A stretch of DNA of 64,000 bases, from NCBI GenBank assembly GCA_024704765.1, contig JAKMXF010000324.1, positions 1 through 64,000 of the forward strand, read 5' to 3'. Positions within the stretch are counted from its first letter, which is position 1, and each line of letters opens with the position of its first letter. Both the position numbers and the translations under genes were made by a program. Source of the stretch: Oopsacas minuta (lineage: Eukaryota > Animalia > Porifera). The notes under the pieces were generated by a model. It did not search any database, was not told the DNA's origin, and saw only the letters and a list, made by a program, of their open reading frames with translations. Positions 7,731 through 38,170 of the stretch are shown here, in pieces.

Positions 7731-9332
7731 ATGCATAAGAAGAATAGTACCAAATTCCTTGTAACTATTTCCTATAAATCTATTGATTTCGAATTCGCGC
7801 AACACTTCGAACCAGATGATATCAACATTAAATGGTGGCGACAGTTTAGAACTACAGATTCACTTAAAATCGGTGAATCCCCGATCTGGAATAAAACCAG
7901 AGTTGATGACAATGGTTTCAGTGGTGGACAAGCTATTTATAGGTTCAGTTGCAGTCCGACTTTGAGAGTAACTCTGCATAAAGCGAAAAAGGACAAAGAA
8001 TCATTCGAACGAAAAGTCTACCGATTTGCAATAGAATCAATACGTTACGATGGTAGGGCAAAGACTCTGGCATCAACAGAACTAGATATGAGTGATTATG
8101 CTACTGCATTAGGGGACACGCAGTACCTCGCAATAGCATTGGAACCTAAGAAGAAATATGTATTGAAGGCTGTCATTAACTTGTCAGTAAATTACGAGTT
8201 CATCCGGTCGGGCAATTCAAAAGACGCGGATATGATTAGCACGTGGTCACGGGAGAGTTTGGAACATTTGTGTAATCCTGAGGAATGCGATGGGAATGCA
8301 ACCTTCATTGGAGATGGAGTATGGGATTTGAGTGTTAAGTCCTTAGCAAGGAAGATACGAGAATATAAAGGAGACCTGTTGGTACAAGGAATAGAAATTC
8401 AAGATTTTCTAAAAGAACTCTCGCAGTGTCAACTAACTGTCATAATTGCAAATTCTGAGTGTAGCGAGGGAGCTAGTGAGATAGTAAGCTCAGTTAATAG
8501 TTTTTATTCAGCTGTTACATCCAAATTTGGAAACAAAATCGAAGTTATTTATCTCTCATTTGGTAAACAAGATGATACACAAACTATTCAAGTTAATTGT
8601 CCAAGAATAAAACCTTATTCAGGACTACATGACGTGTTGATTCAGGATTTTGACATCACGACATCTCCCTACCTCATCGTGTTATCTAAAGACCAGTTAA
8701 TTACCTGTACTTCTGATCCAAATTCCATCCTATCACAAATAAACTCAAAGACCTGTGAGTCAATCGTCGAAAAATGGCTGACAGATGCAGCAAATAATCT
8801 CCACAAACACTCAACAGAATCTTTACCTATAAAACAAGCAAATAAAGAATTCACACTTCAGACAGTGCATTCACTACCCAACTTGGAATTAGAAAATAAA
8901 ATATCGAATATTCGCAAAAAAGTACTCAGACGTTCTTCCTTGTTTTCTGGCCTTCAAACTGTTTCTGAGAAAACCGAGCCTTTGACGGTAATACAGGCTG
9001 AGTATAATATTGGGGGTACGCTTATGAAACGAGGTGTTAGTGGCATAACTGGCAGAATGTGGCGACCGCGACAGTTCAAATACCAAGATGGGAAGATAAT
9101 TTATATTGACGCAAAGAAAAACGAGGTGAAGGGTCACATAGACCTCTCAGAGGTGATATCATTCGATATACTACCAATTGACAAGCAAGATAAGAATAAT
9201 GGGACTTTTAATATAGTAACACGTGATAGAGTGTTTGAAATGCAAGCTATGGATAATGAGCAGATGAAAAGCTGGATCGATGCAGCAGTTACATTGCAAA
9301 AAGCTATTACTTTTAATAATCAAAAGGATTAG
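7731..9332 (+). CDS. NT-C2 (EEIG1/EHBP1-type) + degenerate nucleoredoxin/tryparedoxin-like + PH domain protein, paralogue 1, 533 aa, intronless
   Basis: Uninterrupted ORF. NT-C2 signature (INIKWWR...LRVTLHK...FERKVYRFAIES...LASTELDMSDY); Trx-like SFYSAV...IEVIYLSFG...SPYLIVL; C-terminal PH GTLMKRG...WRPRQF...VFEMQA...SWIDA. Confidence 0.85.
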   Translation: MHKKNSTKFLVTISYKSIDFEFAQHFEPDDINIKWWRQFRTTDSLKIGESPIWNKTRVDDNGFSGGQAIYRFSCSPTLRVTLHKAKKDKESFERKVYRFAIESIRYDGRAKTLASTELDMSDYATALGDTQYLAIALEPKKKYVLKAVINLSVNYEFIRSGNSKDADMISTWSRESLEHLCNPEECDGNATFIGDGVWDLSVKSLARKIREYKGDLLVQGIEIQDFLKELSQCQLTVIIANSECSEGASEIVSSVNSFYSAVTSKFGNKIEVIYLSFGKQDDTQTIQVNCPRIKPYSGLHDVLIQDFDITTSPYLIVLSKDQLITCTSDPNSILSQINSKTCESIVEKWLTDAANNLHKHSTESLPIKQANKEFTLQTVHSLPNLELENKISNIRKKVLRRSSLFSGLQTVSEKTEPLTVIQAEYNIGGTLMKRGVSGITGRMWRPRQFKYQDGKIIYIDAKKNEVKGHIDLSEVISFDILPIDKQDKNNGTFNIVTRDRVFEMQAMDNEQMKSWIDAAVTLQKAITFNNQKD

Positions 9333-9368
9333 TAATTTATTTAGTGTGATTGTAAATTAAGATTAATT

Positions 9369-9539
9369 AAAATTAGCCCAGAAGAACCCTCTTTATTGCA
9401 ACATCGCCTGGCAAAAATGCGAATTCCGTCCGGGATACCACCAAGTCCAGCTATCTCTCAAGAAGGTGACAAAATTTTCTATCCACTGTATTGTAAGAAC
9501 TGTCCTGTCTATGCAGCATTCTTAATTCGTTATACATAG
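9369..9539 (+). mobile_element. Possible decayed Ty3/gypsy reverse-transcriptase fragment
   Basis: Open frame KISPEEPSLLQHRLAKMRIPSGIPPSPAISQEGDKIF...CPVYAAFLI resembles gypsy RT RLPFGISSAPAIFQRxMDKIL...VYLDDILI; locally GC-richer than its flanks. Weak similarity, judged by eye. Confidence 0.3.
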
Positions 9540-9745
9540 CTCGAATATGCATAATTCCAGAAATGTATATCACCTACATATCCTGCAATCACAAAGTACA
9601 GTTATACAATTCAAATATCATATAGCATACAAAAACTGACTCTGTATACACCATAATTAATGCATTGGCTGTAACATAATACTATAAGAGTCTATAAATA
9701 GTTAAGCGATAGGTACAGGCTGAGTTTAGTAGAAAATTGCTGGAA

Positions 9746-11440
9746 ATGTTTAAGAAAAAATCTAGCAAATTTACTGTTTGTTCTTCTTATAAGTCAATCG
9801 AATTTGAATTCCAAAATTCATTTAATCCAGGGAATATCAATGTCAAATGGTCACGACATAAGAGATCCTCTGACTCGTTAAAATATGGTGAACCACCTAT
9901 CTGGAACAAGAGTGGTGAAGGGGACAATGGATTCATTGCGGGTCAGTGTAATTTCAAGAATATGTGCGATCCAGAAATGCAAGTCACACTACATAAGGGC
10001 AAGAAAGGAGCAACATTTGACACCAAACTATATCGCTATACAATCGAGTCCGTCAATGAATTGGGTCACGCAAAAACACTCGGAAGTGCTGATATAGATT
10101 TCGGATACTACGCAGATTACAAAGGCAGCACACATTACCTCGCTATAGACATGAAACCCAAACAGAAATTCGTTATCAAGGCTATACTAAATTTGCAGGT
10201 TACTTTTGAGTTTATAAAGACTGCTAATGCCAAAGATGCTGACATGATAAGTACTTTTTCAAAAGATAGCGAATCGTTCCCTCACACTTCTCCCGATCTA
10301 GACTCTGCATCAACGCTAGGTCTTGTCATCGATCAGAATCAGTTCTCATTAGCTCACCAAATTCAGCACTATCATGATGACGTAATACTCCCTGGGGCCA
10401 GTAATGCGGATATTTTCAATCACTTACCAAACTGCAAACTAATAATCCTAATATTCGATGGAAGATGGATAGAAAAGTCCCCAAAAATCGTTCAAACTTT
10501 GAATATGTTTTACAATCAACTCAAAATGAAGTTCTTCACTTCCCTGGAGGTATTCTATGTTTCGATGGATAGAGACGATGAATCACTAATAGAAACTATA
10601 CAGAACAACTATCTTAAATGCGCCGCTGTAAAACCACAATCCCAGCTCTCCAATGCCATCACACAGCACTACGAAATCATTAAAGCACCTCACATGCTTG
10701 TGTTATCCGAATCACGAGTAGTTAATGCTATCAATGGAGATACAGCTATCATTGAATATCTAGACTCCACAGACAGTTGGAAAATGGTTGAAAAATGGAT
10801 TACAGCATCAGATAGAACGTTCAGTATTTCTTCATTTGATACTGTCTCCTGTGCTTCATTTCAATCTAATCGAAGAGTCAAAGATCTTACATCAGAAATA
10901 TTGAAGGAGAAAGAAGCAGTAATAACCTGTTTGGAGGCAGACAAGGCAATTCTATCAAGCTCTAATGCACAACTAGAGGATGAAGTATCTAAATTGAATG
11001 ATAAACTTGTCAGACAAACTTCCTTCATCTCAGATCAGGCTAAAAATGAAAAGCGGTTGACTCAAGAGACGAAACTCCTCGAAGCAGAGAGGGACGTAAG
11101 AGGGACATTAATGAAGAGAGGTGTCAGAGGAGTGACAGCTAGCATCTGGAGACATAGATTCTTCCAATATGAAGATAACAAAATTCTATACATTGACCCC
11201 AAAACAAACGAAACGAAAGGATTTATAAGTGTGCCAGACATAATATCGATACATAAATTTCCGAAAGAACATCAAGATAAAAATTGTGCCTCTTTCACGG
11301 TCACAGTGCCAGGAAGGGTGTTTGAGATGCAAGCGAGAGACGCTGACCATATGAGTTCATGGATTAATGCCGTGGAAGTGTTGAAGGAAAGGTGTTTAAA
11401 TAAACCTACTTTACGTGACGTCATTAATGTAGCAGATTAA
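9746..11440 (+). CDS. NT-C2 + degenerate nucleoredoxin-like + coiled coil + PH domain protein, paralogue 2, 564 aa, intronless
   Basis: First ATG at 9746 (the track starts at an upstream TTG). Clear paralogue of 7731-9332. Trx-like LIILIFDGRWIEKSPKIVQTLNMFYNQLK...LEVFYVSMDRDD; PH GTLMKRGVRG...WRHRFF...VFEMQARD...SWINAV. Confidence 0.87.
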   Translation: MFKKKSSKFTVCSSYKSIEFEFQNSFNPGNINVKWSRHKRSSDSLKYGEPPIWNKSGEGDNGFIAGQCNFKNMCDPEMQVTLHKGKKGATFDTKLYRYTIESVNELGHAKTLGSADIDFGYYADYKGSTHYLAIDMKPKQKFVIKAILNLQVTFEFIKTANAKDADMISTFSKDSESFPHTSPDLDSASTLGLVIDQNQFSLAHQIQHYHDDVILPGASNADIFNHLPNCKLIILIFDGRWIEKSPKIVQTLNMFYNQLKMKFFTSLEVFYVSMDRDDESLIETIQNNYLKCAAVKPQSQLSNAITQHYEIIKAPHMLVLSESRVVNAINGDTAIIEYLDSTDSWKMVEKWITASDRTFSISSFDTVSCASFQSNRRVKDLTSEILKEKEAVITCLEADKAILSSSNAQLEDEVSKLNDKLVRQTSFISDQAKNEKRLTQETKLLEAERDVRGTLMKRGVRGVTASIWRHRFFQYEDNKILYIDPKTNETKGFISVPDIISIHKFPKEHQDKNCASFTVTVPGRVFEMQARDADHMSSWINAVEVLKERCLNKPTLRDVINVAD

Positions 11441-12201
11441 TTTGCTGTTGTTGTTATTGATCATTAGGTTGCATATATATGAATATCTTTATTATCATCC
11501 ATGGTATTTTATTGATTGCATTTGTAACTAATTTTGTCATTTTTATCCACAGTAATTGTTCAGCAATCTTACCCAACCAAATCTTCATATTTGCAATTTG
11601 GGTTGTAGCAATTGAAAACTTTGAATTTTACTATATTCAGACTTAAGTGTAACACTTTGAAGTGTGAAATACGTATATTACTGTAAGCGAGGGCTAATTA
11701 ATGAAGATGAGCTTGTTTCTCAGATTTATTGAAAATTATCGAAAAGTTGCATTTCCTCTAACTAAGCCAAAAGTATTTGAACGCCTATTAGTTAGAAATA
11801 TTAGACATAACAACGAAAATAAGTTCGATAGTTTGTTAAGCTATTTACTGTTTAATGGAGTTTAGTTCCAGACATAAATTTATCGCCAAAAATTGGTTCC
11901 ATTAGAGATTTGGAATTAGTGGAAGGCACAAGACAGGTTTTCACCATTCTATGATAGAATTAGCTAACAAATCAAAAATATCATATATCAACACAATTTC
12001 CAAATAATTGAAATAAATACGAAACTATTATCTAGGAAGGATTAACGATAATAACTTGATTATAACTGATACTGTGTATAGCATCATTGAGTTATAATTA
12101 CCCTATCCACCTGCCTAATAGATAAACCATAAGGACTCTTATAGGAAATATTAATTTACAAATACTTACAACATAAAAGCAGGCAATAAAATGTACAAAT
12201 T

Positions 12202-15200
12202 TTATGAAGAATTTTGGAAATGTTTCAATGCTCTTACGATAGTGTATGGTTGGGAATTCGATAGAAAATGAAGTTCGATTTTCTCTAAAACGCTCAATTC
12301 CAAGGCTCTGCCTGTTAGCAAAGTCAGTGAACTTTTTTCGATAATTTTATTCAAAAATTTTCCTTGAAGTTCAGAGATGTATGCTTTCACCTTTTTTTCT
12401 GTGATATTAATGTCCGTCAACAGTCGTTCACCGTCAAAAACAACTAATTGAAGAAGAGCGAGGGCATATGTCGCATCCAATCGTCTCTGTAGATTCATTT
12501 CTAATAGACCCTTAGCTACCTTTTGAATCCAAACAGTGTATTTTGATCTTTGTTGGAAATTCGGTAGTTCTTCTGTAGTATAAGATTTTGTAATAAGATT
12601 CTGATCTTCAAACGGGTTTGCTTCACTCATCATTTCATAAATAAGACATCCGACTGCGAAACAATCTGTACCGGAGTAATTTAGTTCTGGTACATTATTT
12701 TGTGCATTCGTGATCTCTGGGGGCAGTTTTGTCTCGTCACCCCCAAGCCACTGGAGTTCCTCAAACTTGTATAAGAAAGGTTGCGATCTTGGTGGTCCTG
12801 GTCGATGCAGTGCATATGTAAATCCTGATATCTTAACTTGTAGAATCTCATCTGTATCGGTCTCTCTGGATAAGAGAATGTCAGACAAGTTTAGGTCACG
12901 GTGTACCAGTTTATGTCTATGCATATGCGCTACACCCGACAGTATCTGTATAAGATATACTATTACGTCATACTCGTATTTCTCTGGGTCAAGTTCCAAT
13001 AATGGTTTGTTCTCAACAAGGTGTTTCTCAAGGGATCCAGCACGTGTTTGATCTAGGATACAAGCTTGTTCATGTTGTAGTAGAGATTTACAACGATTCC
13101 TTATCTCATTTGGAATGTCAATTAGTGTATGCGCGTGGAGCACATACGGGTTCCTGGGTATTGAGCTACTGATGGCTTGTATGGATTGAAATGCACGTGA
13201 TATGACGTCATCTGGGTTCCAGTCTTTCGGCCATACTGAGAACTCCTTCTGTACTTCATTTTGTTGTATGAGTATAGCTATATTTAACGGAGGACGCTGG
13301 TTATCGACTATATCGACCCGATCCCAATCTATTTCTTCCCAGTTCATTTGTCGCATATTTTGCTTATAAAGATGATCAGAAAGGATGCGAATTAGTTTCG
13401 AATTTTCACTCACGATCTTCTTATACATGGTCACTGCTTGTCCAATTTCATCCGATACGGCTTGATCTATTCTCATTTGTACATAAGATCCAGAGTCACT
13501 AGTGTGAATGCTCGAAGGCCTCGCTAGTTTAGTTTGTGAATCTAAGAGATTGTTAGCACTAGAGGTGTCGAAAGCTTTTTGAGTATCTTGTATGACATTA
13601 GGCAATTGTATTGATGGTGAATCCACGTTCTCATACAGACTTCCTGACCGCACGTGCCTGTTGTATCTATTCCCCGGCGGTTGTCTGGTTGCTACCATTT
13701 GATTAGGCTGCATATATCCTGTGTTGATCTGTGCCACGTTAACTAGAGACCGCTTAACCTCCTCCTGGGATGCATTAGGAGGGAAGGCGGGGATTTCCGG
13801 TTTGACTGCGTACGGTGTCACTGAGCTACTCATGTGCCCTCTGAATTGTGGCACTCTGAAACTATCAAATTGAACTGGAACCTCAACAAGGCCTAGGTTC
13901 ATTTCACTTTTGCTTTTGTATCTCAAAAGATGTGTGTTGTCCGTACGAAATGTCCTACTCGGTTTACTCGGGGGTTTGCTACGTTTGCAGACAGGAGACA
14001 GGTAATCTGTGAGAAATGTTTTATCACACCTCATGGCGTCCTCTCTCTCCTGTGATGCGTTAGGTGTTAACGGGAATGGTTTATATTTTCTACGGAAATT
14101 AGAATCGAGCGAATTCTCACTGAATTCTGGGAAACGAGTTTGCAAATCTTCTCTAGTGTTTATGGCAGACATAGGCACTAAATTCAATGGTAGGTAGTGG
14201 TGGGATGGCTGGCTATCGGTGGGACTAAACTGGTTAGATTTAATGGGACTTAAAACCCCGCTTGGATATTTCTTAGGTGATTGTTGTTCCTGTGGCTCGA
14301 TGACAAGACTAGCTACACCACAGTATGTTGGTGAAGTTTCAGGTATGGAACTTTCTGGGTATTTTGCTTTCTGTACCAGCTGTGACATCATAGAATCGGG
14401 CGGGATAATATGTATATCTTCTTTGCAGAATTCTTTACGTCGGGGGCTTTTAAGATCTTTGTCTTTGGAGCGTTTCTTTTGTGACCAACGGGGAAGTCGA
14501 ATTGGAATGCAGGATGTAACGGCACCTGTTAGTGAACGCATACTTGTTGCTCCAGTAGACTCCAGAGAACCTGAATTACGTCGAGGGCCGTCTGACCTGT
14601 GCCGACGCCGAATTTTTGGGGAAAGAAGACCTTTGTGTGATTTTGGTACGTTGCTGGGTGATACAGTGAGATGGGTATTTGGTTCGATGAGAGGACTGAG
14701 GTTGATTGCGTCCATCTCAGTTCCAGAATCAGTACTAATTGATAGTTCCTTTTTATCAGCTGTTTCACTGGTAGGTTCAATATTTTTCTCTTGTACAGGG
14801 CTGAATAACGTGAACTGTGTCTTTATTGGATATGTCCTATCACTGTTGGGTTGGTATGAAGATTTGGTCTTGGGTGTCTGTTGCTTTTCATTATAGGATT
14901 GTTCAAGTTGGTTGAAATTGTAGAAATCTTGTACTTCTTGGTCGTTAACTATTGATACAGCATAAGGAAGTACTTGAGGAGTTGTGGGGCTGTTTGATAA
15001 TAGTCCAGGAGAAACTGAGTTTCGTGCTTGTAATTTGAGCGGTGAAGGAGGTATGAATTGTTTCTTTTGTAACGCGGTTATTGATGGCGGAGAGTTTGTA
15101 AGGGGTTCATCCAACTGTCCATCGGGTTCAGTCCTGCTTTGGAGAAGAATATCCATGTTAATCGGTGGAATATTTTTAGATTCTCTTCTGGATAATGTCT

Positions 15201-15483
15201 TGCTTAATCTAGGTTGAATATTGTATTCGAATTTGGTGATTTTCGTTTGAGGCTGTGGTGTTAACCAATCAGAACGTAGAGATTTGATGTTACGAGGGTG
15301 TAATTCGGGCGTGAGAGGTTTCAGGTTGTGTTTTTTCAAAATTCCGTTTGGCCTTTTCTGTTGTTGTTGTTGTTGTAATTGTTGTGTATCGTCGTGTTTG
15401 TTGTCTATTTGGAAACAATTCATACATACATGCTCTCGCCACAATTGTGGCTGAAAATTATGACAAACCAATGTATTTTGCAT
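12202..15483 (-). CDS. PEAK1: PEAK1/Pragmin (SgK269/SgK223) family pseudokinase, 1093 aa, intronless
   Basis: N-terminal CHNFQPQLWREHVCMNCFQIDNKH matches the PEAK/Pragmin CxxFxxxxWxxxxCxNCF...H motif. Long disordered middle with Tyr motifs (YENV, YVQM). Kinase fold with VHRDLNLSDILL, DFG replaced by SGF, LPPEI, DCFAVGCLIYEM, NPFE. Confidence 0.85.
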   Translation of the reverse strand: MQNTLVCHNFQPQLWREHVCMNCFQIDNKHDDTQQLQQQQQQKRPNGILKKHNLKPLTPELHPRNIKSLRSDWLTPQPQTKITKFEYNIQPRLSKTLSRRESKNIPPINMDILLQSRTEPDGQLDEPLTNSPPSITALQKKQFIPPSPLKLQARNSVSPGLLSNSPTTPQVLPYAVSIVNDQEVQDFYNFNQLEQSYNEKQQTPKTKSSYQPNSDRTYPIKTQFTLFSPVQEKNIEPTSETADKKELSISTDSGTEMDAINLSPLIEPNTHLTVSPSNVPKSHKGLLSPKIRRRHRSDGPRRNSGSLESTGATSMRSLTGAVTSCIPIRLPRWSQKKRSKDKDLKSPRRKEFCKEDIHIIPPDSMMSQLVQKAKYPESSIPETSPTYCGVASLVIEPQEQQSPKKYPSGVLSPIKSNQFSPTDSQPSHHYLPLNLVPMSAINTREDLQTRFPEFSENSLDSNFRRKYKPFPLTPNASQEREDAMRCDKTFLTDYLSPVCKRSKPPSKPSRTFRTDNTHLLRYKSKSEMNLGLVEVPVQFDSFRVPQFRGHMSSSVTPYAVKPEIPAFPPNASQEEVKRSLVNVAQINTGYMQPNQMVATRQPPGNRYNRHVRSGSLYENVDSPSIQLPNVIQDTQKAFDTSSANNLLDSQTKLARPSSIHTSDSGSYVQMRIDQAVSDEIGQAVTMYKKIVSENSKLIRILSDHLYKQNMRQMNWEEIDWDRVDIVDNQRPPLNIAILIQQNEVQKEFSVWPKDWNPDDVISRAFQSIQAISSSIPRNPYVLHAHTLIDIPNEIRNRCKSLLQHEQACILDQTRAGSLEKHLVENKPLLELDPEKYEYDVIVYLIQILSGVAHMHRHKLVHRDLNLSDILLSRETDTDEILQVKISGFTYALHRPGPPRSQPFLYKFEELQWLGGDETKLPPEITNAQNNVPELNYSGTDCFAVGCLIYEMMSEANPFEDQNLITKSYTTEELPNFQQRSKYTVWIQKVAKGLLEMNLQRRLDATYALALLQLVVFDGERLLTDINITEKKVKAYISELQGKFLNKIIEKSSLTLLTGRALELSVLEKIELHFLSNSQPYTIVRALKHFQNSS

Positions 15484-16063
15484 TGTATTTTACACTTTAA
15501 CTGCAGGTAACTTATATTTATATAGAATTGCAACTAATGGCTTATTGTATTGTCTAATTAAGCATATCTGTTTACAAATCAATATTATGCTCTCTATCTT
15601 TTAATAATTCCTAGAATTAGAAATAACCAACCAAAAAAGTTGTTAACCTGAGCTGAATTTTCATTTTATACTCTGACATTGCCAAATATTGCGTAAAATA
15701 TTCAAGTGGAATTAATTGCTCATTGCTATATATGAAGAATGATTCCTTATCTTCCCTAGTAACATAAAGAGTCTAATGGAATGTATTATTAGCTAGCTAA
15801 ATAGCCTAATGTTTGTCCAGCTGCTGTTAGCAGATCATGTTGCATTGGAAATTCAAAATTATGCTATTCGCTCTGGAATGTGTATTACTAAATATTCATA
15901 TAGATAGTAGGAGTTAATCGCATATTTATTGCAAATTCCTTGTAAGATATTCTGTAAAAGTTGTACTTTTATTGTGACGAAGAGGAATTAATCAATATTC
16001 CATCATTTGGTTTGTTCGAGGGATTTCATTTTTGCATTTACATGCAAGTATGTACAGACGTAA

Positions 16064-30900: not shown

Positions 30901-31013
30901 ACATTAATTAAGTATATACGATTTCCTCGTATAATTATGAGTATTAACTACTGTTATGTTTTAGCAGACAGAATTAGTATTGGCATGATTAACAGACATT
31001 TTGCATTCAACTA

Positions 31014-31165
31014 CAGTCATCTTCCGTTAAATTGAAGCTCAAGGGACCGTGATAATTCCTTAGATATAACTGATGGGATATGTGTTACTTTGACTGTTTA
31101 TGACCATATTTGTACGAATTGAGACTTCGATACAGCGGATATTTCTATATAACTGGAGCTAACAG
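31014..31165. mobile_element. pogo/Tc1-like MITE, family A, copy 2 (reverse orientation)
   Basis: TA|cagtcatcttccgttaaattgaagctcaaggga...gttactttgactgtttatgaccatatttgtac...ggagctaacag|TA is the reverse of the family A core. Confidence 0.7.
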
Positions 31166-32235
31166 TAGACAACTAAAATATTTGAAATCAAATAATATCG
31201 GACTAACTATCAGCAAGCTATAATCTTATTATCTCAACCTCAACTGGCAGAACTTATAGTTTCTCAATGGTTACACATATACGTACGTCAGCTATTGTTG
31301 TGTATTCCAATTAATAATTATGAAGTAACAATGTAATCACTTGCTGCTTTAACCCCAAATTTGTTTCAGCAGCTTTAAAGAGCAAATTATCATTAACCAA
31401 ATATTCAGGAAGGAATCTAAGCACATAAAGAATTCAGAAAATATGAGTAATTGATTATACACAAAATGAAACTTGTATGAAGAAAGTTGTCTGATTTGAT
31501 ACAAGCTATTATTCGGGCCACAAAAAGAGCAAAATTTATATTTTGGTTGGACAAATACTCAACTTATGCTCGAAACAGCTGAGAGCTGTTGTTAAGTAAA
31601 ATTGGCGAATTACATCCAAAATTTACTCACAGTGCAATTTCTTAGCAACCAAACTGCACAAAACTATTTTACGAATACCCTCCATTAACCTATCAGCATG
31701 TTCAAACGCCACTCACTCATCTAAGAATGTAGCAAATACGTAACTTATAATTCAGTTCATTATCTTTCCTCTAATAAAATAGAAGTAGAATACCAGAAGG
31801 CTGTTGTACCGTAGACTATTCAATACAATTATGGTTTCATTTGTAACTCAATTATCAATAAATACCTCATAATTAATCATGTGTGTATTGATTAAATATT
31901 GATTGTATGATGGTTATATTGATTTGTGAATTCCGCTGATAAATATCTGTAAACAATGAAATTCTGGGAAGATTGGAAGATAGCTTATTGAGAACATAAA
32001 AGGTGTTAGAATTATTCATAGGACATATTGGGATGATTTGATAATGTTTCTATTTATACAAATATTTACAGTGGATAATAATAATCAGGATAATTCAATT
32101 TGGAATTAAAACTCAGTCAACTACGTGATTAGCTTGAATTATACTATGAACACGGACATACCAATCGTTCACATATGTAACTATGGATTACGTATTCATT
32201 AGATATATTCACTATCTTGTAATCAACAAATTCCC

Positions 32236-32384
32236 ATCTGTGCCGACAGCTTAGATTAACGTAAAGTAGCACTATGAATTCTAGGCACTAAATGTTTGTC
32301 GTTAAATTTTCCGTTTATAGTGCCTCCAATTAATAGTGTTACTATAAAGAAATTCCATCTATACATTACGCCGTCCACACAGAT
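32236..32384. mobile_element. MITE family C, second copy
   Basis: Imperfect TIRs atctgtgccgacagc / gccgtccacacagat; internal atagtgcctccaatt is shared with 4744-4844. Confidence 0.6.
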
Positions 32385-32541
32385 TACAATTTTATATATT
32401 TCACTCGGATAAACATTCATAAACTAACTAATAATGTAAACAAGCTTACCCCCCAATAGACATTTCTCAAACATGATATTCAATTTGTAAATATCCAAAC
32501 ACACTATACTATAGTTAACAAACAAGCAAACAACACAACAG

Positions 32542-33201
32542 CTAGGATTTGGTTTCAATCAACTCTTCACTATTAATAACAGGAAGTGTGGGTAGTTCCT
32601 CTTGGGGAGGCGCCATCAACAGAGGATCATTAACTATAACAATCTCCCTCTTCTGCTTTTTCGAACCAGGACCATACGCAAGCATTGGCGGTACCCAATT
32701 TTCTGAATAAATTCCTCCAATGAAATAAAACATAGCCGAAATCAGTAAAGTCATTCCTCCAATGTTTGTTGATAGTATGAAGAAACATGGAATGCTGAAT
32801 ATCATGTAGAACATAGATCTTAAGAACAGATTACGTGTTAGGAAACGGAAAAAATACGGAATTGGAGCGATGTACTCTTGAAAGAGTCTCGTTTCAATGT
32901 TCCCGGTCCTCTTTTTACCTCTAGGGTACTCAATAAGTATGACTAGCAGTGAGAATGGGATCAATAGGTACCTTGTATAGAGGCCATAAGCTGTTGGGGG
33001 AATGGCTCTTAAATTCAAAGAGGCAGCGATCAAGGAACCCCCGAGAATAATCCAGCCTGACCAGTAAGCCTGTTGATTCGCCCAAATTGAGTAAACAACT
33101 CTACTTGTAGGGGGGCAAGCGCAGAAGAATTTGGTGCAATCGCCACATTGGTTCGTGCATGGTTCTGGACAACCACCACATTTTATTTCTTTGTCCTCCA
33201 T
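32542..33201 (-). CDS. CYBA: Cytochrome b-245 light chain (p22phox), 219 aa, intronless, with Cys-rich N-terminal extension
   Basis: IWANQQAYWSG...ILIEYPRGKKRTG...FLTRNLFLRS...SENWVP matches p22phox (MWANEQALASG, LLEYPRGKR, FTRNYYVR, EQWTP). First ATG at 33201. Confidence 0.9.
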   Translation of the reverse strand: MEDKEIKCGGCPEPCTNQCGDCTKFFCACPPTSRVVYSIWANQQAYWSGWIILGGSLIAASLNLRAIPPTAYGLYTRYLLIPFSLLVILIEYPRGKKRTGNIETRLFQEYIAPIPYFFRFLTRNLFLRSMFYMIFSIPCFFILSTNIGGMTLLISAMFYFIGGIYSENWVPPMLAYGPGSKKQKREIVIVNDPLLMAPPQEELPTLPVINSEELIETKS

Positions 33202-33496
33202 TGCTATCAATGAATATGAATGTTTCAGCTAGTTAGTTAATATAGAACAGCCTCAAGGCATACTCAATCACTATCATATTACTGATGTATAATAGTTGAT
33301 AAATTCACGGAAAATACACAATTCTGCAAACGAACTTAATTCAAATATTATTTTGTTAGTTTAATATTCCTGTGATTCTAATGTGCAATACTTATGCAAT
33401 ATCATAAATAGCTTACGAAGTTATGCGTTGGAGGACACGTGCACACCCATTTGTTTTAAGTATTTTTAAAGTTTATGACTGTTTTATACTTGCATA

Positions 33497-33574
33497 CAGG
33501 CCAACTGTCCCGATTTGGGCGGGAAGTCTCACCTTTTGGAATTAGTTGAAGCCAATCTCCTGCAAAACTGGTCA
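33497..33574. mobile_element. hAT/Tip100-like MITE remnant (family E)
   Basis: ggccaactgtcccg...aaaactggtca is the reverse of the ends of the element at 49152-49392 (gggtgacca...gggacagttgg). Confidence 0.45.
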
Positions 33575-34708
33575 AACACCTTGAATATAACGATTAATGC
33601 AGGTTAGTCTAATGAAATTATGCTACGTCTCGCTATGTCCAGCTCAATATGTATTCTATCCCGATTGTTATTCAGACAGGTTGGTAAGTATAGAGAAAGA
33701 ATGACATTTCAAAACCTTTGAACAAGTTTCTGTGAAGCATAACACAAGGAAATATCCAAAATCAGGAGAAAGTACACACACACTAGTTAGTTATTATAGA
33801 AGTGAATGTATAGCTATACTATAGAGTTATAGCATAATTCTAATTGAGTATATGAGCAGATTACGGATGGATATTCACACTATATTTAGTAATTTCTCAG
33901 TAATAGGATAGCTAAATACTGAAATAAACCCATAATATATATAAAATGAGGACATAGCTAGGAGTTGATTGCATTTGTAGTATAAATTGATTATTTGATT
34001 ATAACGCGAGAAATACACAACTCTCATTCAAACCAACAACAACAACAAACACCCCCCTAGTTATTTGTGTTATTTATCCTATTTGGTAAGTATCACTTAA
34101 TTGATTCATTATTTTGTGTTTGTAAGTAATTTTGTCCTTTAACATTGGTATTCTGCAAATAGCTTCAATTATATTACACAAGAGTTAGGTTAATAAATCC
34201 ATCGTGGTTAATCTGTTCAACTACAGAGCCATACAAATAGTGATAAATTCCTCAAGTTAATCGGCCCAACAACTTTATTCCGCTTAATCGGGTCAAAATG
34301 GTTCTGGTTCCGATGTGATGGTGTTTACTGTATCAAAGTAGCTTTAGCGGTCTACTATTTGCATTGGGAATACTACTCATCTTTTGTCCTTGTGTTATCA
34401 TAATATTATAATTACTTGGAGCCTGCACAGGTTCGAACTTTGGATACAGTTTATGTGCGCTTCCCTTACGTATATTCTCCACAAATGTTGCCCTCAATCA
34501 ATATTAGGATAATCTAATTAGCATAGTTTATCAAAGGCTACTATTAGTACGATAGAATAGTGCCACTGTAAAGCTGTAGGCAACAAACGTATTTCATATA
34601 ACATTATTACAGGATACAGGTTGTAACTTTGCTGCAATCAACTTCAACAAAGTAACATCCTGTATATTACACTAGCATTACATTCAATTTCTGTATATTG
34701 TTATAGTT

Positions 34709-35902
34709 ATGGCTGAAGTAATACAGGAGTTTAATGCCGAACAAAAACTTGAAGCCCTCAAAATGGAAATTATCCGAACTTTTGATGAACTTTACGCATT
34801 TCTGTCGGAACACAGGGATTGCCTACTGAATAGACTAGCTAAAATGAAAGAGGGGTATGATACAAATCTAACATTGGAGCAAGCCATCAATGAACTGAAA
34901 ACTGCAAAAGCTAATGCACAAACAATCATGAAAAGCAATTTGTTAGAACCTATGAGAAAAGTTTTCGATGAGCAGTTGGTAGGATTAGAAAATTCAAAGG
35001 TAGCCGTAGATAACTTGAAGATAGTTGAGTTTCGTTGCTATTCTCAAAAAATTAGAACAGCTGTGAAGGAAATTGATTTGTTTGAAATTAGTCCCGAATA
35101 CGTAAAGAGAGAAAATCCCATCAAAAAGGTTTGTAAGCGTGGTAGGGGAAATGGAGAGTTGAATAATCCCTCAGGAATAGCTGTAGATAGAGCAAGGAAT
35201 GTACTTTACATTTGTGACAAAAATAACAGTCGTATTCAAGTGTTGAATACTGAAGGAGAGTATTTACGTTCGTTTGGGACTGATCATTTGAAAGAGCCAT
35301 GGGGTATATGTCTGTCAAAAGAGGAAGTATTCGTTACTGATAAAGCTAAAGAGTCTATTGTGAAGTTTAGTCTAGCAGGACAATTCCTAAAGGAAACAGG
35401 CTCAAGAGGCATTATAGAAGGACGATTTACTTCTATCTCAGGATTGTGTTATGAAGCTGGGTTAATATATGTCTGTGATTTTAGTATACAAAGAATTCAA
35501 ATATTTGATTCTAATCTTAAATTCATTAAAGAGTTCGGCTACGGAGAACTCAAACTTCCAAAAGACATTACTCTATTCTCTGACAGAATCTACATCCTAT
35601 CTCAAAACAACTCCATCTATTGCTACAACAGAGACTGTACTCTCCAGAATATTATACAGCTGATTGGACAGGATCAGCCAATGACAGCAGCTATCTTCTT
35701 CACGATTGATAAGAAGGGGAACTTCTTAATTACCGACAATACAACTGACGAAATCCGTATCTTCTCACCTCAAGGAGTGATGAAGCATATTCTGGGTAGA
35801 GGACATCTCTCTTTCTTATGCGGTATTGTATTAGATAACTCAGATAATATTATATGTGTGAATCATGGCATTGAAGGCTATGCCCTCTTCCAGAAATATT
35901 AA
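34709..35902 (+). CDS. Coiled-coil + NHL-repeat beta-propeller protein (TRIM71/NHL-like, no RING/B-box), 397 aa, intronless
   Basis: Six NHL-type repeats (GELNNPSGIAVD, LKEPWGICL, FTSISGLCYE, LKLPKDITL, FFTIDKKGNFLITD, FLCGIVLDNSDNII) after an N-terminal helical region. Confidence 0.88.
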   Translation: MAEVIQEFNAEQKLEALKMEIIRTFDELYAFLSEHRDCLLNRLAKMKEGYDTNLTLEQAINELKTAKANAQTIMKSNLLEPMRKVFDEQLVGLENSKVAVDNLKIVEFRCYSQKIRTAVKEIDLFEISPEYVKRENPIKKVCKRGRGNGELNNPSGIAVDRARNVLYICDKNNSRIQVLNTEGEYLRSFGTDHLKEPWGICLSKEEVFVTDKAKESIVKFSLAGQFLKETGSRGIIEGRFTSISGLCYEAGLIYVCDFSIQRIQIFDSNLKFIKEFGYGELKLPKDITLFSDRIYILSQNNSIYCYNRDCTLQNIIQLIGQDQPMTAAIFFTIDKKGNFLITDNTTDEIRIFSPQGVMKHILGRGHLSFLCGIVLDNSDNIICVNHGIEGYALFQKY

Positions 35903-36592
35903 CTATCGTCCTAAATGATCCTAATTGTATATTTCCAATTTTTGTTTACCCCTCTTAACTTTATATTCTATTTGTATATTATTTACTCTCAATTAAATAT
36001 CAATAACACACAGCTTATGTCAATAACTTCAATTCATATCACAAGTGTGGCATATATTGGTTATTATTCTGTCGGATAGAAAGTGTGTTCATTCCGTCAA
36101 TTTGCGGTTGATTAGGGTCCTGTCCTGTTTTTCTTTTTTTAACGGATCACTTTAGAGAATTGAGACTGTGAGTATATGCCTACACACCAGACCCAGGGGC
36201 AGATACTGAGGTTTATCTAGGTACTTGGCGGGCACGGTCAGCAGCCATGAAGGAGTGCCAACCGTGATACTCAAATGTGTACATGTTAGGTCCAAAGGTG
36301 TAATCCTAACCCTAAAATAAAAAGAGTATGCCAAGGAATTCCTGAGCCGAAAATAATATTAGCCAACTTGAATTTGCCTGTCTCAGATTTCCTATAGTCT
36401 TCTGCACTAATTTACTTTCGGATATTATCTCATGTTAGCTTTGCAAAGTATTAGCAAGCAAACTAATCTATCAATGAAGAATTATCCCATCTCATCTAAT
36501 ATTATTCGAATAATCTCATAGCACATATAACTAGGATTAGAATTATATTACAATTAATATTAAAAGAGTAATTAACAAAATATTATTCTAAA

Positions 36593-38170
36593 ATGCTAAA
36601 ACGTAGCAAGAAAATCAGAGGGCTAGTATTCGATATAACCTCTTCTTATGATTATGCTGAAGTTGAATTTACAAAAGCAAACAAGCCGAATGGTGTGAAC
36701 ATAAAATGGGCCAAGCAGAGCCAGCTGATCGATTTCAATGGAGCGGGAAAAGATCTGGTTTGGGAACATGTTCCTGAAGGTGATAATAAATGGAGAGTCG
36801 ATTTTCCCGAAAAGTGTCAGCAAAGTTTAAAAATAACAACTTTTAAAGGCAAGAAAGGTCTGACATTCGAGCGCACCATAAGTAAATACGCAATAGAGAC
36901 AGAATTAGAAGGAAAATCAAAGTGTATCGGGGAGGCAGAAATCGATCTAGGTGAACACATTAACACGAATAACCTCACAACAAAAATAAGCATAGACTTT
37001 ATTCCCAAACAGAAATATGCCAAAAAAGCTGTCTTGATTATAACTTTGAATTTCGCCTTTTCGCACTCTGGAGATTTGCCTAACTACGTAACACTGCCAA
37101 GGCAACGTCCAAAAGCCGCAAACACTCTGTGCAACGCTTTGAAAGATTCTTTTGGAGATATTGTCACGACGGGGGCTTCGAAACCAACAGACATGACAGA
37201 ATTATTAAATTCTGACAAAATCTATCTTCTTATAAATAACAATTTGGAGGGTGCGAATGAGCTTTTCACACATGCAAAAATGTTTGCGTCGAAAACCAAG
37301 CTAAACCGACATCAAATCCAATTACTTTTCATATCATTGGGACAGAATCTTGAAGAATTGACGCGAATTGTCAAAGAACAAAATTTAGGATTTCCGGTGA
37401 TAAAAGCTTCACAAATTTTGAAAAACTTGAGTAGTGCATTTTTAACCGCAGACAGTAACGAAAATTTACTTATCATAACACCTGACGGTGAGATTATAGA
37501 GATATTTTCAGGTTTAGATGAAATCAAAGAACATATGGATAAAGAAATAATTAACTTGAATAGCGATGGTCTGTCCATCGTGTCGAATGTCTCTAGCAAG
37601 AAGCGCAGCCGGAGTTCAGTTAAGAATCGGACAGCAGACATATTGATGGAAACTGAACAGAAAATTACGAATTTATTGGAAGAAAAGGATTTCTTAACAA
37701 GCGAAAACGAGCAACTTAAGTTAACCTTACATCGGAAAACCTCCGAATTAGATATCAAAAAGGAGAAAGAAAAGGAAAACAAGGAAGCAGAAGCAAATCT
37801 AGAGTACAAAACTAAAATTCTCCAGGCCGAGCGGGACATTAGAACTACTTTAAACAAGCGAGGGGTAAGCGGACTGACTGGGAAGAATTTCAGAACACGA
37901 AGTTTCTCATTTGAAGACGATTGCATATGTTACTACGACCCAATGAATAACAAAATGAAAGGATACATCAATATTGTCAATATTAAATCCATCGAAAAAG
38001 CGCCGGATGATAAACAAGATAAAACAGGAGGTCTGTTCTACATAAATACACATATGAGAGTATACGAGGTTCAAGCACAGAATAACTTCCAAATGGAGAA
38101 ATGGATATCTGCAGTTGAAGTGTTAAGAAAAGTGGTCATAGACAGAATATCAAGGACAGATACTATATGA
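36593..38170 (+). CDS. NT-C2 + degenerate thioredoxin-like + coiled coil + PH domain protein, paralogue 3, 525 aa, intronless
   Basis: Same architecture as 7731 and 9746: GVNIKWAK...LKITTFKGKKG...IGEAEIDLGEH; QIQLLFISLG...LLIITPDGEII; TTLNKRG...VYEVQA...KWISAV. Confidence 0.85.
   Translation: MLKRSKKIRGLVFDITSSYDYAEVEFTKANKPNGVNIKWAKQSQLIDFNGAGKDLVWEHVPEGDNKWRVDFPEKCQQSLKITTFKGKKGLTFERTISKYAIETELEGKSKCIGEAEIDLGEHINTNNLTTKISIDFIPKQKYAKKAVLIITLNFAFSHSGDLPNYVTLPRQRPKAANTLCNALKDSFGDIVTTGASKPTDMTELLNSDKIYLLINNNLEGANELFTHAKMFASKTKLNRHQIQLLFISLGQNLEELTRIVKEQNLGFPVIKASQILKNLSSAFLTADSNENLLIITPDGEIIEIFSGLDEIKEHMDKEIINLNSDGLSIVSNVSSKKRSRSSVKNRTADILMETEQKITNLLEEKDFLTSENEQLKLTLHRKTSELDIKKEKEKENKEAEANLEYKTKILQAERDIRTTLNKRGVSGLTGKNFRTRSFSFEDDCICYYDPMNNKMKGYINIVNIKSIEKAPDDKQDKTGGLFYINTHMRVYEVQAQNNFQMEKWISAVEVLRKVVIDRISRTDTI

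What the first reader, a model, noticed from the sequence alone, without database searches (positions are those of the whole stretch)
7731..38170. Three-member family with an unfamiliar architecture: NT-C2 + redox-dead nucleoredoxin-like fold + PH
Seen: three intronless paralogues (7731-9332, 9746-11440, 36593-38170) share an N-terminal NT-C2, a central thioredoxin-like segment that aligns with nucleoredoxin/tryparedoxin (xYFSAxWCPPC...FY...EVVFVSxDR...PxLVIL), a coiled coil and a C-terminal PH domain. The WCPPC site is degraded differently in each: ECSEGA (one Cys), RWIEKS (none), NNLEGA (none). Established: NT-C2 binds membrane lipids in EHBP1/FAM102, and nucleoredoxin regulates Dishevelled via its Trx fold. 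I do not know this combination from any characterised protein. Inference: a dual membrane-binding adaptor or tether with a pseudo-redoxin interaction module, expanded in this lineage.
Basis: partly seen in the sequence, partly recalled or inferred. Interest (0 to 1): 0.78.

Follow-up and report, generated by a model that had tools for sequence, protein, structure and literature searches.

The report
Sponge membrane adaptors with dead thioredoxin
Three intact glass-sponge genes encode proteins with two lipid-binding ends, a coiled coil and a thioredoxin-type domain that has lost its catalytic cysteines; other sponges have the same protein with the cysteines intact, so this is an uncharacterised sponge-only family that became a non-enzyme in glass sponges.

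Summary
Window 7731-9332, 9746-11440 and 36593-38170 are intact single-exon ORFs of 533, 564 and 525 aa. Each has NT-C2, a tryparedoxin/nucleoredoxin-class thioredoxin fold, a long helix and a C-terminal PH domain. None has a CxxC motif.

- **Distribution.** The architecture is sponge-wide. Oscarella (two species), Ephydatia and Halichondria carry it with an intact WCPPC or CxPC site. All are labelled hypothetical or uncharacterised.
- **Age of the scaffold.** NT-C2, coiled coil and PH without the thioredoxin domain occur in Capsaspora, Pigoraptor and a jellyfish.
- **Own genome.** This genome fits the published Oopsacas minuta assembly and has six family loci. None keeps the CxxC pair.
- **Ancient copies.** The three window copies lie in a clade with 100/100 support. 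Two have orthologues in other genomes I take to be glass sponges. The array sits beside the same kinase and NHL genes there.
- **Constraint.** The dead domain has dN/dS of 0.24-0.39, against about 1 in the adjacent linker.
- **Expression.** One run shows gene-shaped coverage over copies 1 and 2.

My reading is a phosphoinositide-recruited adaptor whose former redox domain is now a binding module. That function is inferred, not shown. The scan's first readers noted this architecture on two other pieces of this genome.

The parts
7731..9332 (+). Copy 1: a 533-aa single-exon gene (NT-C2, Trx-like, helix, PH)
   Evidence: The ORF is intact and Pfam finds the domains. It has an orthologue, P0016, in a 100/97 clade. 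Run X4 shows gene-shaped coverage of about 300-570 over it, against 15-55 upstream.
7737..8207 (+). Copy 1 NT-C2 domain (aa 3-159)
   Evidence: PF10358 scores 33.6 bits against a cut-off of 25.2.
8325..8792 (+). Copy 1 thioredoxin-like domain (aa 199-354). The former active site ANSECSEGA lies at 8448-8474.
   Evidence: The family profile gives E 1.9e-39. PF13905 scores 22.1 bits, below its cut-off of 27. Motif and cis-Pro status are in the table; coordinates come.
9018..9299 (+). Copy 1 PH domain (aa 430-523)
   Evidence: PF00169 scores 43.5 bits.
9746..11440 (+). Copy 2: a 564-aa single-exon gene, 413 bp downstream of copy 1
   Evidence: The ORF is intact. It has 62-67% identical homologues of the same architecture (P0002-P0008), with which it forms one clade. 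X4 coverage is about 1000-2500 and ends at about 11430.
9752..10216 (+). Copy 2 NT-C2 domain (aa 3-157)
   Evidence: PF10358 scores 35.9 bits. The model is all-beta over residues 5-161.
10343..10813 (+). Copy 2 thioredoxin-like domain (aa 200-356). The former active site FDGRWIEKS lies at 10454-10480.
   Evidence: PF13905 scores 42.1 bits. The AF2 model has pLDDT 90. Foldseek matches Trx-fold structures at probability 1.00. dN/dS of this domain is 0.24-0.39 among recent paralogues of the copy-2 clade in two other genomes.
10886..11104 (+). Copy 2 long helix, a putative coiled coil (aa 381-453)
   Evidence: The model has a continuous helix over 381-453. In the best heptad register, 11 of 21 a/d positions are strongly hydrophobic, against a background fraction of 0.26.
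11102..11392 (+). Copy 2 PH domain (aa 453-549), with the KRG...WRHRFF signature
   Evidence: PF00169 scores 36.4 bits. The closest solved PH domain is TAPP1, 1eaz. K457, R458, R469 and R471 are invariant.
36593..38170 (+). Copy 3: a 525-aa single-exon gene and the most diverged member
   Evidence: The ORF is intact. Its terminal branch is 2.07 long inside the 100/100 clade. It lies directly downstream of the NHL gene, as a family member does in L030. Its expression was not tested.
36695..37057 (+). Copy 3 NT-C2 domain (aa 35-155)
   Evidence: PF10358 scores 28.6 bits.
37163..37549 (+). Copy 3 degenerate thioredoxin-like segment (aa 191-319). The motif remnant INNNLEGA lies at 37232-37255.
   Evidence: Pfam finds nothing here, but the family profile gives E 3.1e-11. 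The cis-Pro is replaced by Glu and the motif carries a one-residue deletion.
37850..38131 (+). Copy 3 PH domain (aa 420-513)
   Evidence: PF00169 scores 33.5 bits; PF14593 matches aa 420-513.
12202..15483 (-). Neighbouring 1093-aa protein kinase, a conserved synteny anchor for the tandem array
   Evidence: Pfam finds a Pkinase domain. A kinase of 1073-1141 aa on the opposite strand follows the array in L030 and L031.
34709..35902 (+). Neighbouring NHL-repeat gene, the second synteny anchor (upstream of copy 3)
   Evidence: Pfam finds NHL repeats. It is of the TRIM-NHL type. An NHL gene precedes the array in L030.

Best explanation
These are three constrained members of an uncharacterised family that I found only in sponges; two of them show RNA-like coverage. 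The domain order is NT-C2, a tryparedoxin/nucleoredoxin-class thioredoxin fold, a coiled coil and a PH domain.

Shown:
- The scaffold of NT-C2, coiled coil and PH predates animals. It occurs in Capsaspora and Pigoraptor, and also in a jellyfish.
- Sponges have a thioredoxin domain between the NT-C2 and the coiled coil.
- In homoscleromorph sponges and demosponges that domain keeps a W/R-C-P/H-P-C site, so it looks like a membrane-recruited dithiol reductase.
- In the glass-sponge lineage no family member that I found keeps the Cys pair.
- The clade holding the window's copies arose by old tandem duplication. Its domain keeps the fold. All of its members except copy 3 keep the cis-Pro. All 17 sequences of alignment A1 (window-clade members only, excluding P0019 and P0022) have a Glu where the first Pro of WCPPC used to be.
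- The domain evolves under purifying selection.

Inferred mechanism:
- The protein is a peripheral-membrane adaptor.
- It is recruited by acidic phosphoinositides at both ends. At the N-terminus these are the basic patches of the NT-C2. At the C-terminus it is a PH domain with the K-Xn-R-X-R signature.
- It is probably dimerised by the coiled coil.
- The catalytically dead thioredoxin fold holds a partner non-covalently, possibly the former redox client. Nucleoredoxin binding Dishevelled is a comparable case of a Trx-fold protein acting by binding.
- The paralogues would differ in partner or membrane.
For: - **Genes and domains.** The ORFs are intact and the domains are detected.
- **Fold and class.** The middle-domain model is confident and matches the Trx fold. 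A profile of the middle domain hits the 16-kDa thioredoxins 4fyu (E 2e-29) and 2lus (E 1e-26), and tryparedoxins at 1e-18 to 1e-20.
- **Family extent.** An exhaustive HMMER search of 1.84 billion representatives gives only 14 at E<=1e-30: members of this family or its scaffold relatives.
- **Intact site elsewhere.** Full-length proteins with the same architecture and an intact site are Oscarella pearsei P0024 (WCPPC), O. lobularis P0172 (WCPPC), Ephydatia P0025 (RCPPC) and Halichondria P0204 (WCPPC). The partial Ephydatia model P0029 has WCHPC.
- **No Trx outside sponges.** Capsaspora, Pigoraptor, Sanderia and P0028 have no Trx domain.
- **Tree.** Rooted on the filastereans, the order is the cnidarian-type pair (Sanderia and P0028), Oscarella, the demosponges, and then the presumed glass-sponge lineages. 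The window copies lie in a 100/100 clade.
- **Own genome.** Six loci, none with CxxC.
- **Synteny.** Tandem arrays of 2-5 copies sit beside the same kinase and NHL genes in two other genomes.
- **Selection.** dN/dS is 0.24-0.39 for the Trx-like domain, 0.14-0.53 for NT-C2 and 0.17-0.42 for PH. The linker is 1.0-1.6 in four of the five pairs; the fifth pair showed no change there.
- **Variation between runs.** All listed indel differences lie outside the ORFs, and no joints fall inside them.
- **Expression.** X4 coverage is gene-shaped, with zero depth in the 11431-12218 intergenic stretch.
- **PH domain.** The signature KRG-x7-9-WRxR-[YWF]-F is found in nine of ten family and scaffold members checked, from Pigoraptor to sponges; it was not found in Capsaspora. 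The nearest solved PH domain is the phosphoinositide binder TAPP1.
- **NT-C2 domain.** The KKK patch before strand 1 and RHKR on strand 2 parallel the two patches that EHBP-1 needs for PI(4,5)P2 membrane binding (PMC4894640; sequence).
Against: - No lipid binding, dimerisation or partner binding has been measured.
- The homodimer prediction for the coiled coil plus PH gave no verdict.
- The full-length model shows no fixed arrangement between domains (pTM 0.34).
- Copy 3 and P0022 have badly eroded middle domains, so the Trx-like module is not indispensable in every member.
- Some orthologues of copy 1 carry a Cys at the nucleophile position (P0014 SCEES, P0017 LCKES). 'Redox-dead' is therefore not uniform across the clade.
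- Run X4 is not on record as RNA, so the expression evidence is indirect. Copy 3 was not covered.
- Between species dS is saturated, so the selection estimate rests on recent paralogue pairs in two other genomes.
Confidence: 0.6

Rival explanations
1. The middle domain is an evolutionary relic that now serves only as a folded spacer. The proteins work as their thioredoxin-less relatives in filastereans and cnidarians do, through NT-C2, coiled coil and PH alone.
For: Relatives without any Trx domain exist and are older. Copy 3 has lost the cis-Pro and has a deletion in the motif. P0022 has a five-residue deletion there. Pfam no longer detects the domain in copy 3.
Against: In the copy-2 clade the domain has dN/dS of 0.24-0.39, as low as the flanking lipid-binding domains, while the true linker is about 1. 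All 17 sequences of A1 share an invariant Glu at the old active site. The cis-Pro is kept in 25 of 26 sequences. A spacer would not need a conserved former active-site surface.
Confidence: 0.2
2. Some members still carry out thiol chemistry by a single-cysteine route. They would act as a redox sensor or a mixed-disulfide trap rather than a dithiol reductase. Candidates are copy 1, with its Cys next to the old site, the CxxS orthologues, and the SxxC paralogues on contigs C144 and C11.
For: Copy 1 has a Cys at the Trp position. P0014 and P0017 have CxxS with the Cys at the nucleophile position. The C144 and C11 loci have WSDTC and SSPQC.
Against: Copies 2 and 3 have no Cys in the motif at all. 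Within the copy-1 clade the Cys is not conserved in place or in presence: P0015 has AHEDS and P0016 has QSEVS. SxxC lacks the exposed nucleophilic Cys, by established Trx mechanism.
Confidence: 0.12
3. The ORFs are decaying duplicates or retrocopies without function.
For: They are single-exon and tandem or dispersed copies. Copy 3 sits on a very long branch, and no close orthologue of it was found.
Against: The frames are intact at 525-564 aa. Copies 1 and 2 have orthologues in several genomes in conserved synteny. dN/dS is below 0.5. Coverage over copies 1 and 2 is gene-shaped and RNA-like. Indel variants occur only outside the ORFs. Single-exon genes are ordinary in this genome. Tandem position with shared flanks argues for DNA-level duplication, not retroposition.
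Confidence: 0.04

Closest known systems
Tryparedoxin / nucleoredoxin / 16-kDa thioredoxin class (Pfam Thioredoxin_8; PDB 4fyu, 2lus, 1o73 and others)
   Same: The middle domain is homologous to this class: E 2e-29 to 1e-18 by profile, with the same fold. It shares the YVSxD strand and the cis-Pro. The sponge relatives outside glass sponges even keep the class-typical WCPPC.
   Different: In the window copies both catalytic cysteines are gone. The domain is embedded between lipid-binding domains rather than free-standing (tryparedoxin, TRP16) or triplicated (animal nucleoredoxin). There is no evidence of a link to Dishevelled.
EHBP1 / EEIG1 (FAM102) / plant PMI1 NT-C2 proteins
   Same: All have an N-terminal NT-C2 domain above the Pfam threshold. 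All have a basic patch before strand 1 and another on strand 2, like those EHBP-1 needs for PI(4,5)P2 binding.
   Different: The family has no CH domain, no C-terminal bMERB/DUF3585 Rab-binding domain and no NPF motifs. It has a Trx fold and a PH domain instead.
Holozoan proteins with NT-C2, coiled coil and PH (Capsaspora CAOG_03896, Pigoraptor EP01137_P033342, Sanderia EP00794_P010235)
   Same: These are true homologues over the NT-C2, the coiled coil and the PH domain. Pigoraptor and Sanderia share the KRG...WRxRxF signature (not found in Capsaspora); the filastereans were used as outgroup and Sanderia branches next.
   Different: They have no thioredoxin domain. They are also uncharacterised.
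Non-catalytic thioredoxin-fold proteins used as binding or structural modules (Toxoplasma TRXL1/TRXL2 microtubule inner proteins, PDB 7miz; nucleoredoxin-like RdCVF, cited from general knowledge)
   Same: A Trx fold of the same broad class is retained. TRXL1 and TRXL2 appear among the sequence and fold matches.
   Different: There is no orthology, and the context, partners and architecture differ. This is an analogy of principle only.

Membership tests
NT-C2 (PF10358) | Profile match above the curated cut-off, located at the N-terminus | tested here: met
   Scores are 33.6, 35.9 and 28.6 bits against a cut-off of 25.2. The match starts at residue 3 in copies 1 and 2 and at residue 35 in copy 3.
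NT-C2 (PF10358) | Basic patches before strand 1 and on strand 2, which EHBP-1 uses for phosphoinositide binding | tested here: met
   MFKKKSSK and KWSRHKR are conserved in alignment A1. They were compared with the RRLRR and HRRRK patches of EHBP-1 (PMC4894640). This is sequence inspection only.
NT-C2 (PF10358) | Actual binding to membrane lipid | not testable with these tools
   This needs liposome co-sedimentation or localisation experiments.
Tryparedoxin/nucleoredoxin-class thioredoxin (PF13905 Thioredoxin_8) | Profile match above the curated cut-off | tested here: inconclusive
   Copy 2 passes (42.1 bits against 27). Copy 1 fails (22.1 bits). Copy 3 has no hit. The family-specific profile recovers copy 1 at 1.9e-39 and copy 3 at 3.1e-11.
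Tryparedoxin/nucleoredoxin-class thioredoxin (PF13905 Thioredoxin_8) | Thioredoxin fold | tested here: met
   The copy-2 domain model has pLDDT 90. Foldseek gives probability 1.00 to 4fyu, ResA, StoA and tryparedoxins, with TM-scores of 0.5-0.7. Copies 1 and 3 were not modelled separately.
Tryparedoxin/nucleoredoxin-class thioredoxin (PF13905 Thioredoxin_8) | WCxxC redox site | tested here: not met
   The three copies have ECSEGA, RWIEKS and NN-LEGA. They are therefore homologous to the family but are not functional dithiol oxidoreductases.
Tryparedoxin/nucleoredoxin-class thioredoxin (PF13905 Thioredoxin_8) | Conserved cis-Pro loop | tested here: met
   Pro is present in copies 1 and 2 and in 25 of 26 aligned members. 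It is replaced by Glu in copy 3.
Animal nucleoredoxin (NXN) proper | Protein made of tandem Trx-like modules with a central active WCPPC, and no lipid-binding domains | tested here: not met
   There is a single Trx-like module flanked by NT-C2 and PH. Separate tandem Trx_8 loci are present elsewhere in the genome (C210 and C354).
PH domain (PF00169), phosphoinositide-binding subclass | Profile match above the cut-off | tested here: met
   Scores are 43.5, 36.4 and 33.5 bits against a cut-off of 25.1.
PH domain (PF00169), phosphoinositide-binding subclass | Basic K-Xn-(K/R)-X-R signature in strands 1-2 | tested here: met
   K457, R458, R469 and R471 are invariant. The signature is found in nine of ten family and scaffold members checked. 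The nearest solved PH domains are TAPP1 and SWAP70, then CERT. Which lipid it prefers is unknown.
EHBP1 family | CH domain, C-terminal bMERB (DUF3585) domain and NPF motifs | tested here: not met
   Pfam finds none of these domains, and no family member has an NPF motif.

The most novel reading that the evidence does not exclude
Sponges invented a phosphoinositide-targeted tryparedoxin-type reductase by inserting a thioredoxin domain into an older holozoan scaffold of NT-C2, coiled coil and PH. Glass sponges, whose tissue is syncytial, then converted the whole family into non-catalytic adaptors and multiplied them in tandem arrays. If so, the dead domain's conserved acidic former active site binds the former redox client, giving a lineage-specific membrane-trafficking or tethering system.
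Probability: 0.3. Interest if true: 0.6.

Novelty: new variant of a known kind. Interest (0 to 1): 0.48.

Why it matters
Every domain here is well known, but the combination is undescribed. I found no paper that mentions NT-C2 together with thioredoxin or nucleoredoxin. Public records call the proteins hypothetical or uncharacterised.

The family offers a clean natural series for studying how an enzyme becomes a pseudoenzyme:
- an older scaffold without the domain;
- sponges with an intact WCPPC site;
- glass-sponge lineages with SxxC, CxxS or no cysteine.

All of these sit on one tree, and the dead domain shows measurable purifying selection. The family also points to an unstudied idea: a thiol reductase recruited to phosphoinositide membranes in early-branching animals. 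The practical value is modest. It gives annotators a name for a recurrent sponge gene family, and it gives experimenters a defined pair to compare, Oscarella or Ephydatia (active site present) against Oopsacas (site lost).

Tried and rejected
- **Homodimer prediction.** I ran copy 2 residues 375-564 as two copies. The result was no verdict: score 0.47 with one control at 0.41. It is not evidence either way.
- **ESM Atlas.** A look-alike search with the Oscarella protein gave no usable hit.
- **Literature.** Searches for NT-C2 with thioredoxin, nucleoredoxin or PH found nothing relevant. The original NT-C2 survey, which I recalled from memory as Zhang and Aravind 2010 and guessed an id for, is not held. 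I therefore could not check whether it lists this architecture.
- **NHLRC2 link.** I asked whether the conserved NHL neighbour hints at an NHLRC2-like link between Trx and NHL. The NHL gene is of the TRIM-NHL type (Thin, TRIM71), and NHLRC2 is only a weak match, so I dropped the idea.
- **EHD link.** No family member has one.
- **Retrogene origin.** I rejected this for the intronless copies because they are tandem with conserved flanks, and the genome averages 1.59 introns per gene.
- **Cross-species dN/dS.** dS is saturated, so no value could be computed.
- **C11 paralogue.** I searched and compared them exon by exon only, so it is not in the tree.
- **RNA evidence for copy 3.** This could not be obtained because the single read-laying run was used on copies 1 and 2.

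Full report
**1. The observation**

Pfam finds NT-C2 at the N-terminus and PH at the C-terminus of all three, above the curated cut-offs. It finds Thioredoxin_8 in the middle of copy 2 at 42.1 bits, above the cut-off of 27. Copy 1 scores 22.1 bits, below the cut-off, and copy 3 has no hit.

A profile of the family's middle domain, built without copies 1 and 3, still recovers copy 1 at E 1.9e-39 and copy 3 at E 3.1e-11. All three therefore carry the domain, at different stages of divergence.

The site that corresponds to F-S-A-x-W-C-P-P-C reads as follows:
- Copy 1: ANSECSEGA.
- Copy 2: FDGRWIEKS.
- Copy 3: INNN-LEGA.

One refinement: the lone Cys of copy 1 aligns with the Trp, not with a catalytic Cys.

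**2. The fold**

A full-length AlphaFold2 model of copy 2 has four separately folded parts with no fixed mutual arrangement (mean pLDDT 70.6, pTM 0.34):
- an all-beta N-domain;
- an alpha/beta middle domain;
- a 73-residue helix (residues 381-453);
- a PH-like beta sandwich with a C-terminal helix.

The middle domain was folded alone with a 26-sequence alignment (A2) and is confident (pLDDT 90, pTM 0.88). Foldseek against the PDB returns only thioredoxin-fold proteins at probability 1.00. The top match is the 16-kDa thioredoxin of Wuchereria bancrofti (4fyu). ResA, StoA and tryparedoxins follow, with TM-scores of 0.5-0.7.

By sequence profile, A2 hits 4fyu at 2e-29, 2lus at 1e-26 and tryparedoxins at 1e-18 to 1e-20.

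**3. Which genome**

Earlier notes of this scan name the glass sponge Oopsacas minuta. The assembly searched here has 365 contigs and 61.46 Mb. The Oopsacas genome paper reports 365 scaffolds, about 61 Mb and 36% G+C (PMC10280926), and the window has 30-39% G+C.

That paper gives 1.59 introns per gene. Several other long single-ORF genes lie in the window: a kinase, a separase and a SET-domain protein. Being intronless is therefore unremarkable here.

**4. The family is larger and older than three genes**

*In the same genome.* A profile search finds further loci:
- An intronless 630-aa gene on C144 with FSANWSDTC.
- An intronless gene on C221 that has the Trx domain, coiled coil and PH but no NT-C2, with WIPVS at the site.
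- A multi-exon gene on C11 with NT-C2, Trx (FAANSSPQC) and PH exons.

None of the six loci has CxxC.

*In public data.* The word-based search found only 16 relatives, all unnamed ENA proteins with the same architecture. The exhaustive HMMER search of 1.84 billion representatives found 14 at E<=1e-30. Pfam scans and cluster look-ups of these show the same four-part architecture with an intact site in four full-length proteins:

| Species | Protein | Length | Site |
|---|---|---|---|
| Oscarella pearsei | P0024 | 776 aa | WCPPC |
| Oscarella lobularis | P0172 | 763 aa | WCPPC |
| Ephydatia muelleri | P0025 | 727 aa | RCPPC |
| Halichondria panicea | P0204 | 664 aa | WCPPC |

A second Ephydatia gene has WCHPC; its 457-aa model P0029 holds only the Trx and PH domains, while the longer model P0170 also carries a weak NT-C2 match below cut-off (24.0 bits). 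A JGI metagenome protein, P0023, also has WCPPC. The named ones are labelled 'hypothetical' or 'uncharacterized'.

Proteins with NT-C2, coiled coil and PH but no detectable Trx domain occur in Capsaspora, in Pigoraptor, in the scyphozoan Sanderia and in one unnamed run.

**5. Phylogeny and synteny**

I built a maximum-likelihood tree of 35 members, rooted on the two filastereans. The branching order is:
- the thioredoxin-less cnidarian-type pair first;
- then a sponge clade (99/96);
- Oscarella, then the demosponges;
- then the lineages I take to be glass sponges: the C221 type, the C144 type, and a clade with 100/100 support on a long stem (1.12) that holds all three window copies.

Within that last clade, copy 1 groups with P0016 (100/97) inside a six-member subclade, and copy 2 sits in a twelve-member subclade. 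Copy 3 is a very long branch (2.07) with no close orthologue. The 526-aa gene next to the NHL gene in another genome is only 29% identical to it.

In two other assemblies the family forms tandem arrays:
- **ERZ20067936:** an NHL gene, then four members, then CFAP161, then a kinase on the opposite strand.
- **ERZ25071281:** five members, then the kinase.

These flanks match the window's kinase at 12202-15483 and its NHL gene at 34709-35902. The duplications are therefore old DNA-level tandem events that later expanded differently in each species. In Oopsacas the array has been split into two blocks about 25 kb apart.

**6. Are the genes alive?**

*Selection.* I computed dN/dS among recent tandem paralogues in the two other genomes, by the Nei-Gojobori method with my own script:

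| Region | dN/dS |
|---|---|
| Trx-like domain | 0.24-0.39 |
| NT-C2 | 0.14-0.53 |
| PH | 0.17-0.42 |
| Linker between NT-C2 and Trx | 1.0-1.6 in four of five pairs |

In the fifth pair (P0008 and P0011) the linker showed no change, so no ratio applies. The dead domain is therefore as constrained as the lipid-binding domains. Between species dS is saturated.

*Reads.* Four runs of one study hold the stretch. Three show flat, DNA-like depth. The fourth, X4, is gene-shaped:
- about 15-55 upstream of copy 1;
- about 300-570 over copy 1;
- about 1000-2500 over copy 2;
- zero from 11431 to 12218;
- high again over the kinase.

No joints fall inside the ORFs. X4 is not on record as RNA, so this is suggestive only. 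One X4 contig bridges the 413-bp gap between copies 1 and 2.

All listed indel differences between runs lie outside the ORFs (7415, 9631, 11540-11758). The 18 listed base differences that fall inside the two ORFs are 8 synonymous and 10 mostly conservative replacements. Copy 3 was not covered.

**7. What the parts suggest about mechanism**

*NT-C2.* The family keeps a basic patch before strand 1 (MFKKKSSK) and another on strand 2 (KWSRHKR). C. elegans EHBP-1 needs the two equivalent patches (RRLRR and HRRRK) to bind PI(4,5)P2-rich endosomes (PMC4894640).

*PH.* K457, R458, R469 and R471 are invariant, in the arrangement KRG-x7-9-WRxR-[YWF]-F. That arrangement is found in nine of ten family and scaffold members checked, from Pigoraptor to sponges; it was not found in Capsaspora. 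It is the K-Xn-(K/R)-X-R signature of phosphoinositide-binding PH domains (established knowledge). The nearest solved PH domains are TAPP1 and SWAP70, followed by CERT.

*Helix.* It has a heptad register with Leu at d positions and an Asn at an a position. I read that as typical of parallel dimers, which is an inference. The dimer prediction gave no verdict.

*Trx-like domain.* It keeps the YVSxD strand and the cis-Pro. All 17 sequences of alignment A1, which holds window-clade members only (P0019 and P0022 are not in it), have a Glu where the first Pro of WCPPC stood (E243 of copy 2). The C144 type has an Asp at that position.

My reading is a dimeric peripheral-membrane adaptor or tether, recruited by phosphoinositides at both ends. 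The former active-site face of the dead thioredoxin fold holds a partner. That step is inferred, not shown.

**8. Caveats on 'redox-dead'**

Copies 2 and 3 have no cysteine at the site. Copy 1 has a Cys one position before it. Two orthologues of copy 1 have CxxS with the Cys at the nucleophile position (P0014 SCEES, P0017 LCKES), while two others have none. The C144 and C11 paralogues have SxxC.

The cysteine pair was therefore probably still present in the ancestor of the glass-sponge copies and was lost piecemeal. A single-thiol function cannot be excluded for some members, copy 1 included.

**9. Comparison with what is known**

- **Tryparedoxin/nucleoredoxin class.** The middle domain is a homologue, but it fails the defining redox motif.
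- **Nucleoredoxin proper.** The proteins are not members, because they lack tandem Trx modules.
- **EHBP1 family.** They are not members, because they have no CH domain, no bMERB domain and no NPF motifs.
- **Closest true relatives.** These are the uncharacterised holozoan proteins with NT-C2, coiled coil and PH.
- **Literature.** I found no paper describing the combination. I could not read the original NT-C2 survey.
- **This scan.** Its first readers noted the same architecture on two other pieces of this genome (s1-284929, s1-277186). By their lengths these are probably the C11 and C144 loci I found independently.

**10. Verdict**

The family is an uncharacterised domain architecture that I found only in sponges, and glass sponges carry only non-canonical, mostly cysteine-free versions of it, expanded in tandem. 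I class it as a new variant of known kinds, namely NT-C2 adaptors and thioredoxin-fold pseudoenzymes. It is interesting as an evolutionary series but not categorically new. Its cellular function is still unmeasured.

Noticed in passing
G000:C11:641005-649873 (L011 covers 638000-647999): This is a multi-exon paralogue of the family. Its NT-C2 exon is L011 2994-3443. Its Trx exons, with FAANSSPQC, are L011 4103-4381 and 4744-5214. Its PH exons lie near C11:649132-649873. It is the only family member in this genome with introns. It is closest to the C144 type and to the demosponge P0023, at about 35% identity.
   Followed up: partly
G000:C221:166218-168080 (-), L012 1498-3378: This family member has a degenerate Trx domain (WIPVS), a long K/E-rich coiled coil and a PH domain, but no NT-C2 domain. 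It has an orthologue (P0054, 68% identical) and a more distant relative (P0035) in other genomes.
   Followed up: partly
L031 1-11695 (ENA ERZ25071281 ctg49597_257x_l): A related genome has five tandem copies of the copy-2 type in a row before the conserved kinase. The array has therefore expanded differently in each species.
   Followed up: partly
window 7178-7276: Contigs of all three DNA-like runs break here or continue into unrelated sequence. This suggests a short dispersed repeat or a structural difference about 450 bp upstream of copy 1.
   Followed up: no
window 51748-56439 (+): A single 1563-aa ORF carries a C-terminal Peptidase_C50 domain (244.5 bits). It is a separase encoded without introns.
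   Followed up: no
window 44958-46214 (-): A 418-aa ORF has AWS, SET, PHD and C5HCH domains. It looks like a compact NSD-type histone methyltransferase.
   Followed up: no
window 3355-4488 (+): An ORF carries a SprT-like metalloprotease domain and a zinc ribbon (SPRTN/GCNA-like). Another note of the scan says it is nested in an intron of a cathepsin B gene. I did not check that.
   Followed up: no
G000:C210:472645-473418 and G000:C354:1799-2530: Loci with two tandem Thioredoxin_8-like segments in one open frame. They are candidate genuine nucleoredoxin-type genes of this genome. I did not check them for an intact CxxC.
   Followed up: no
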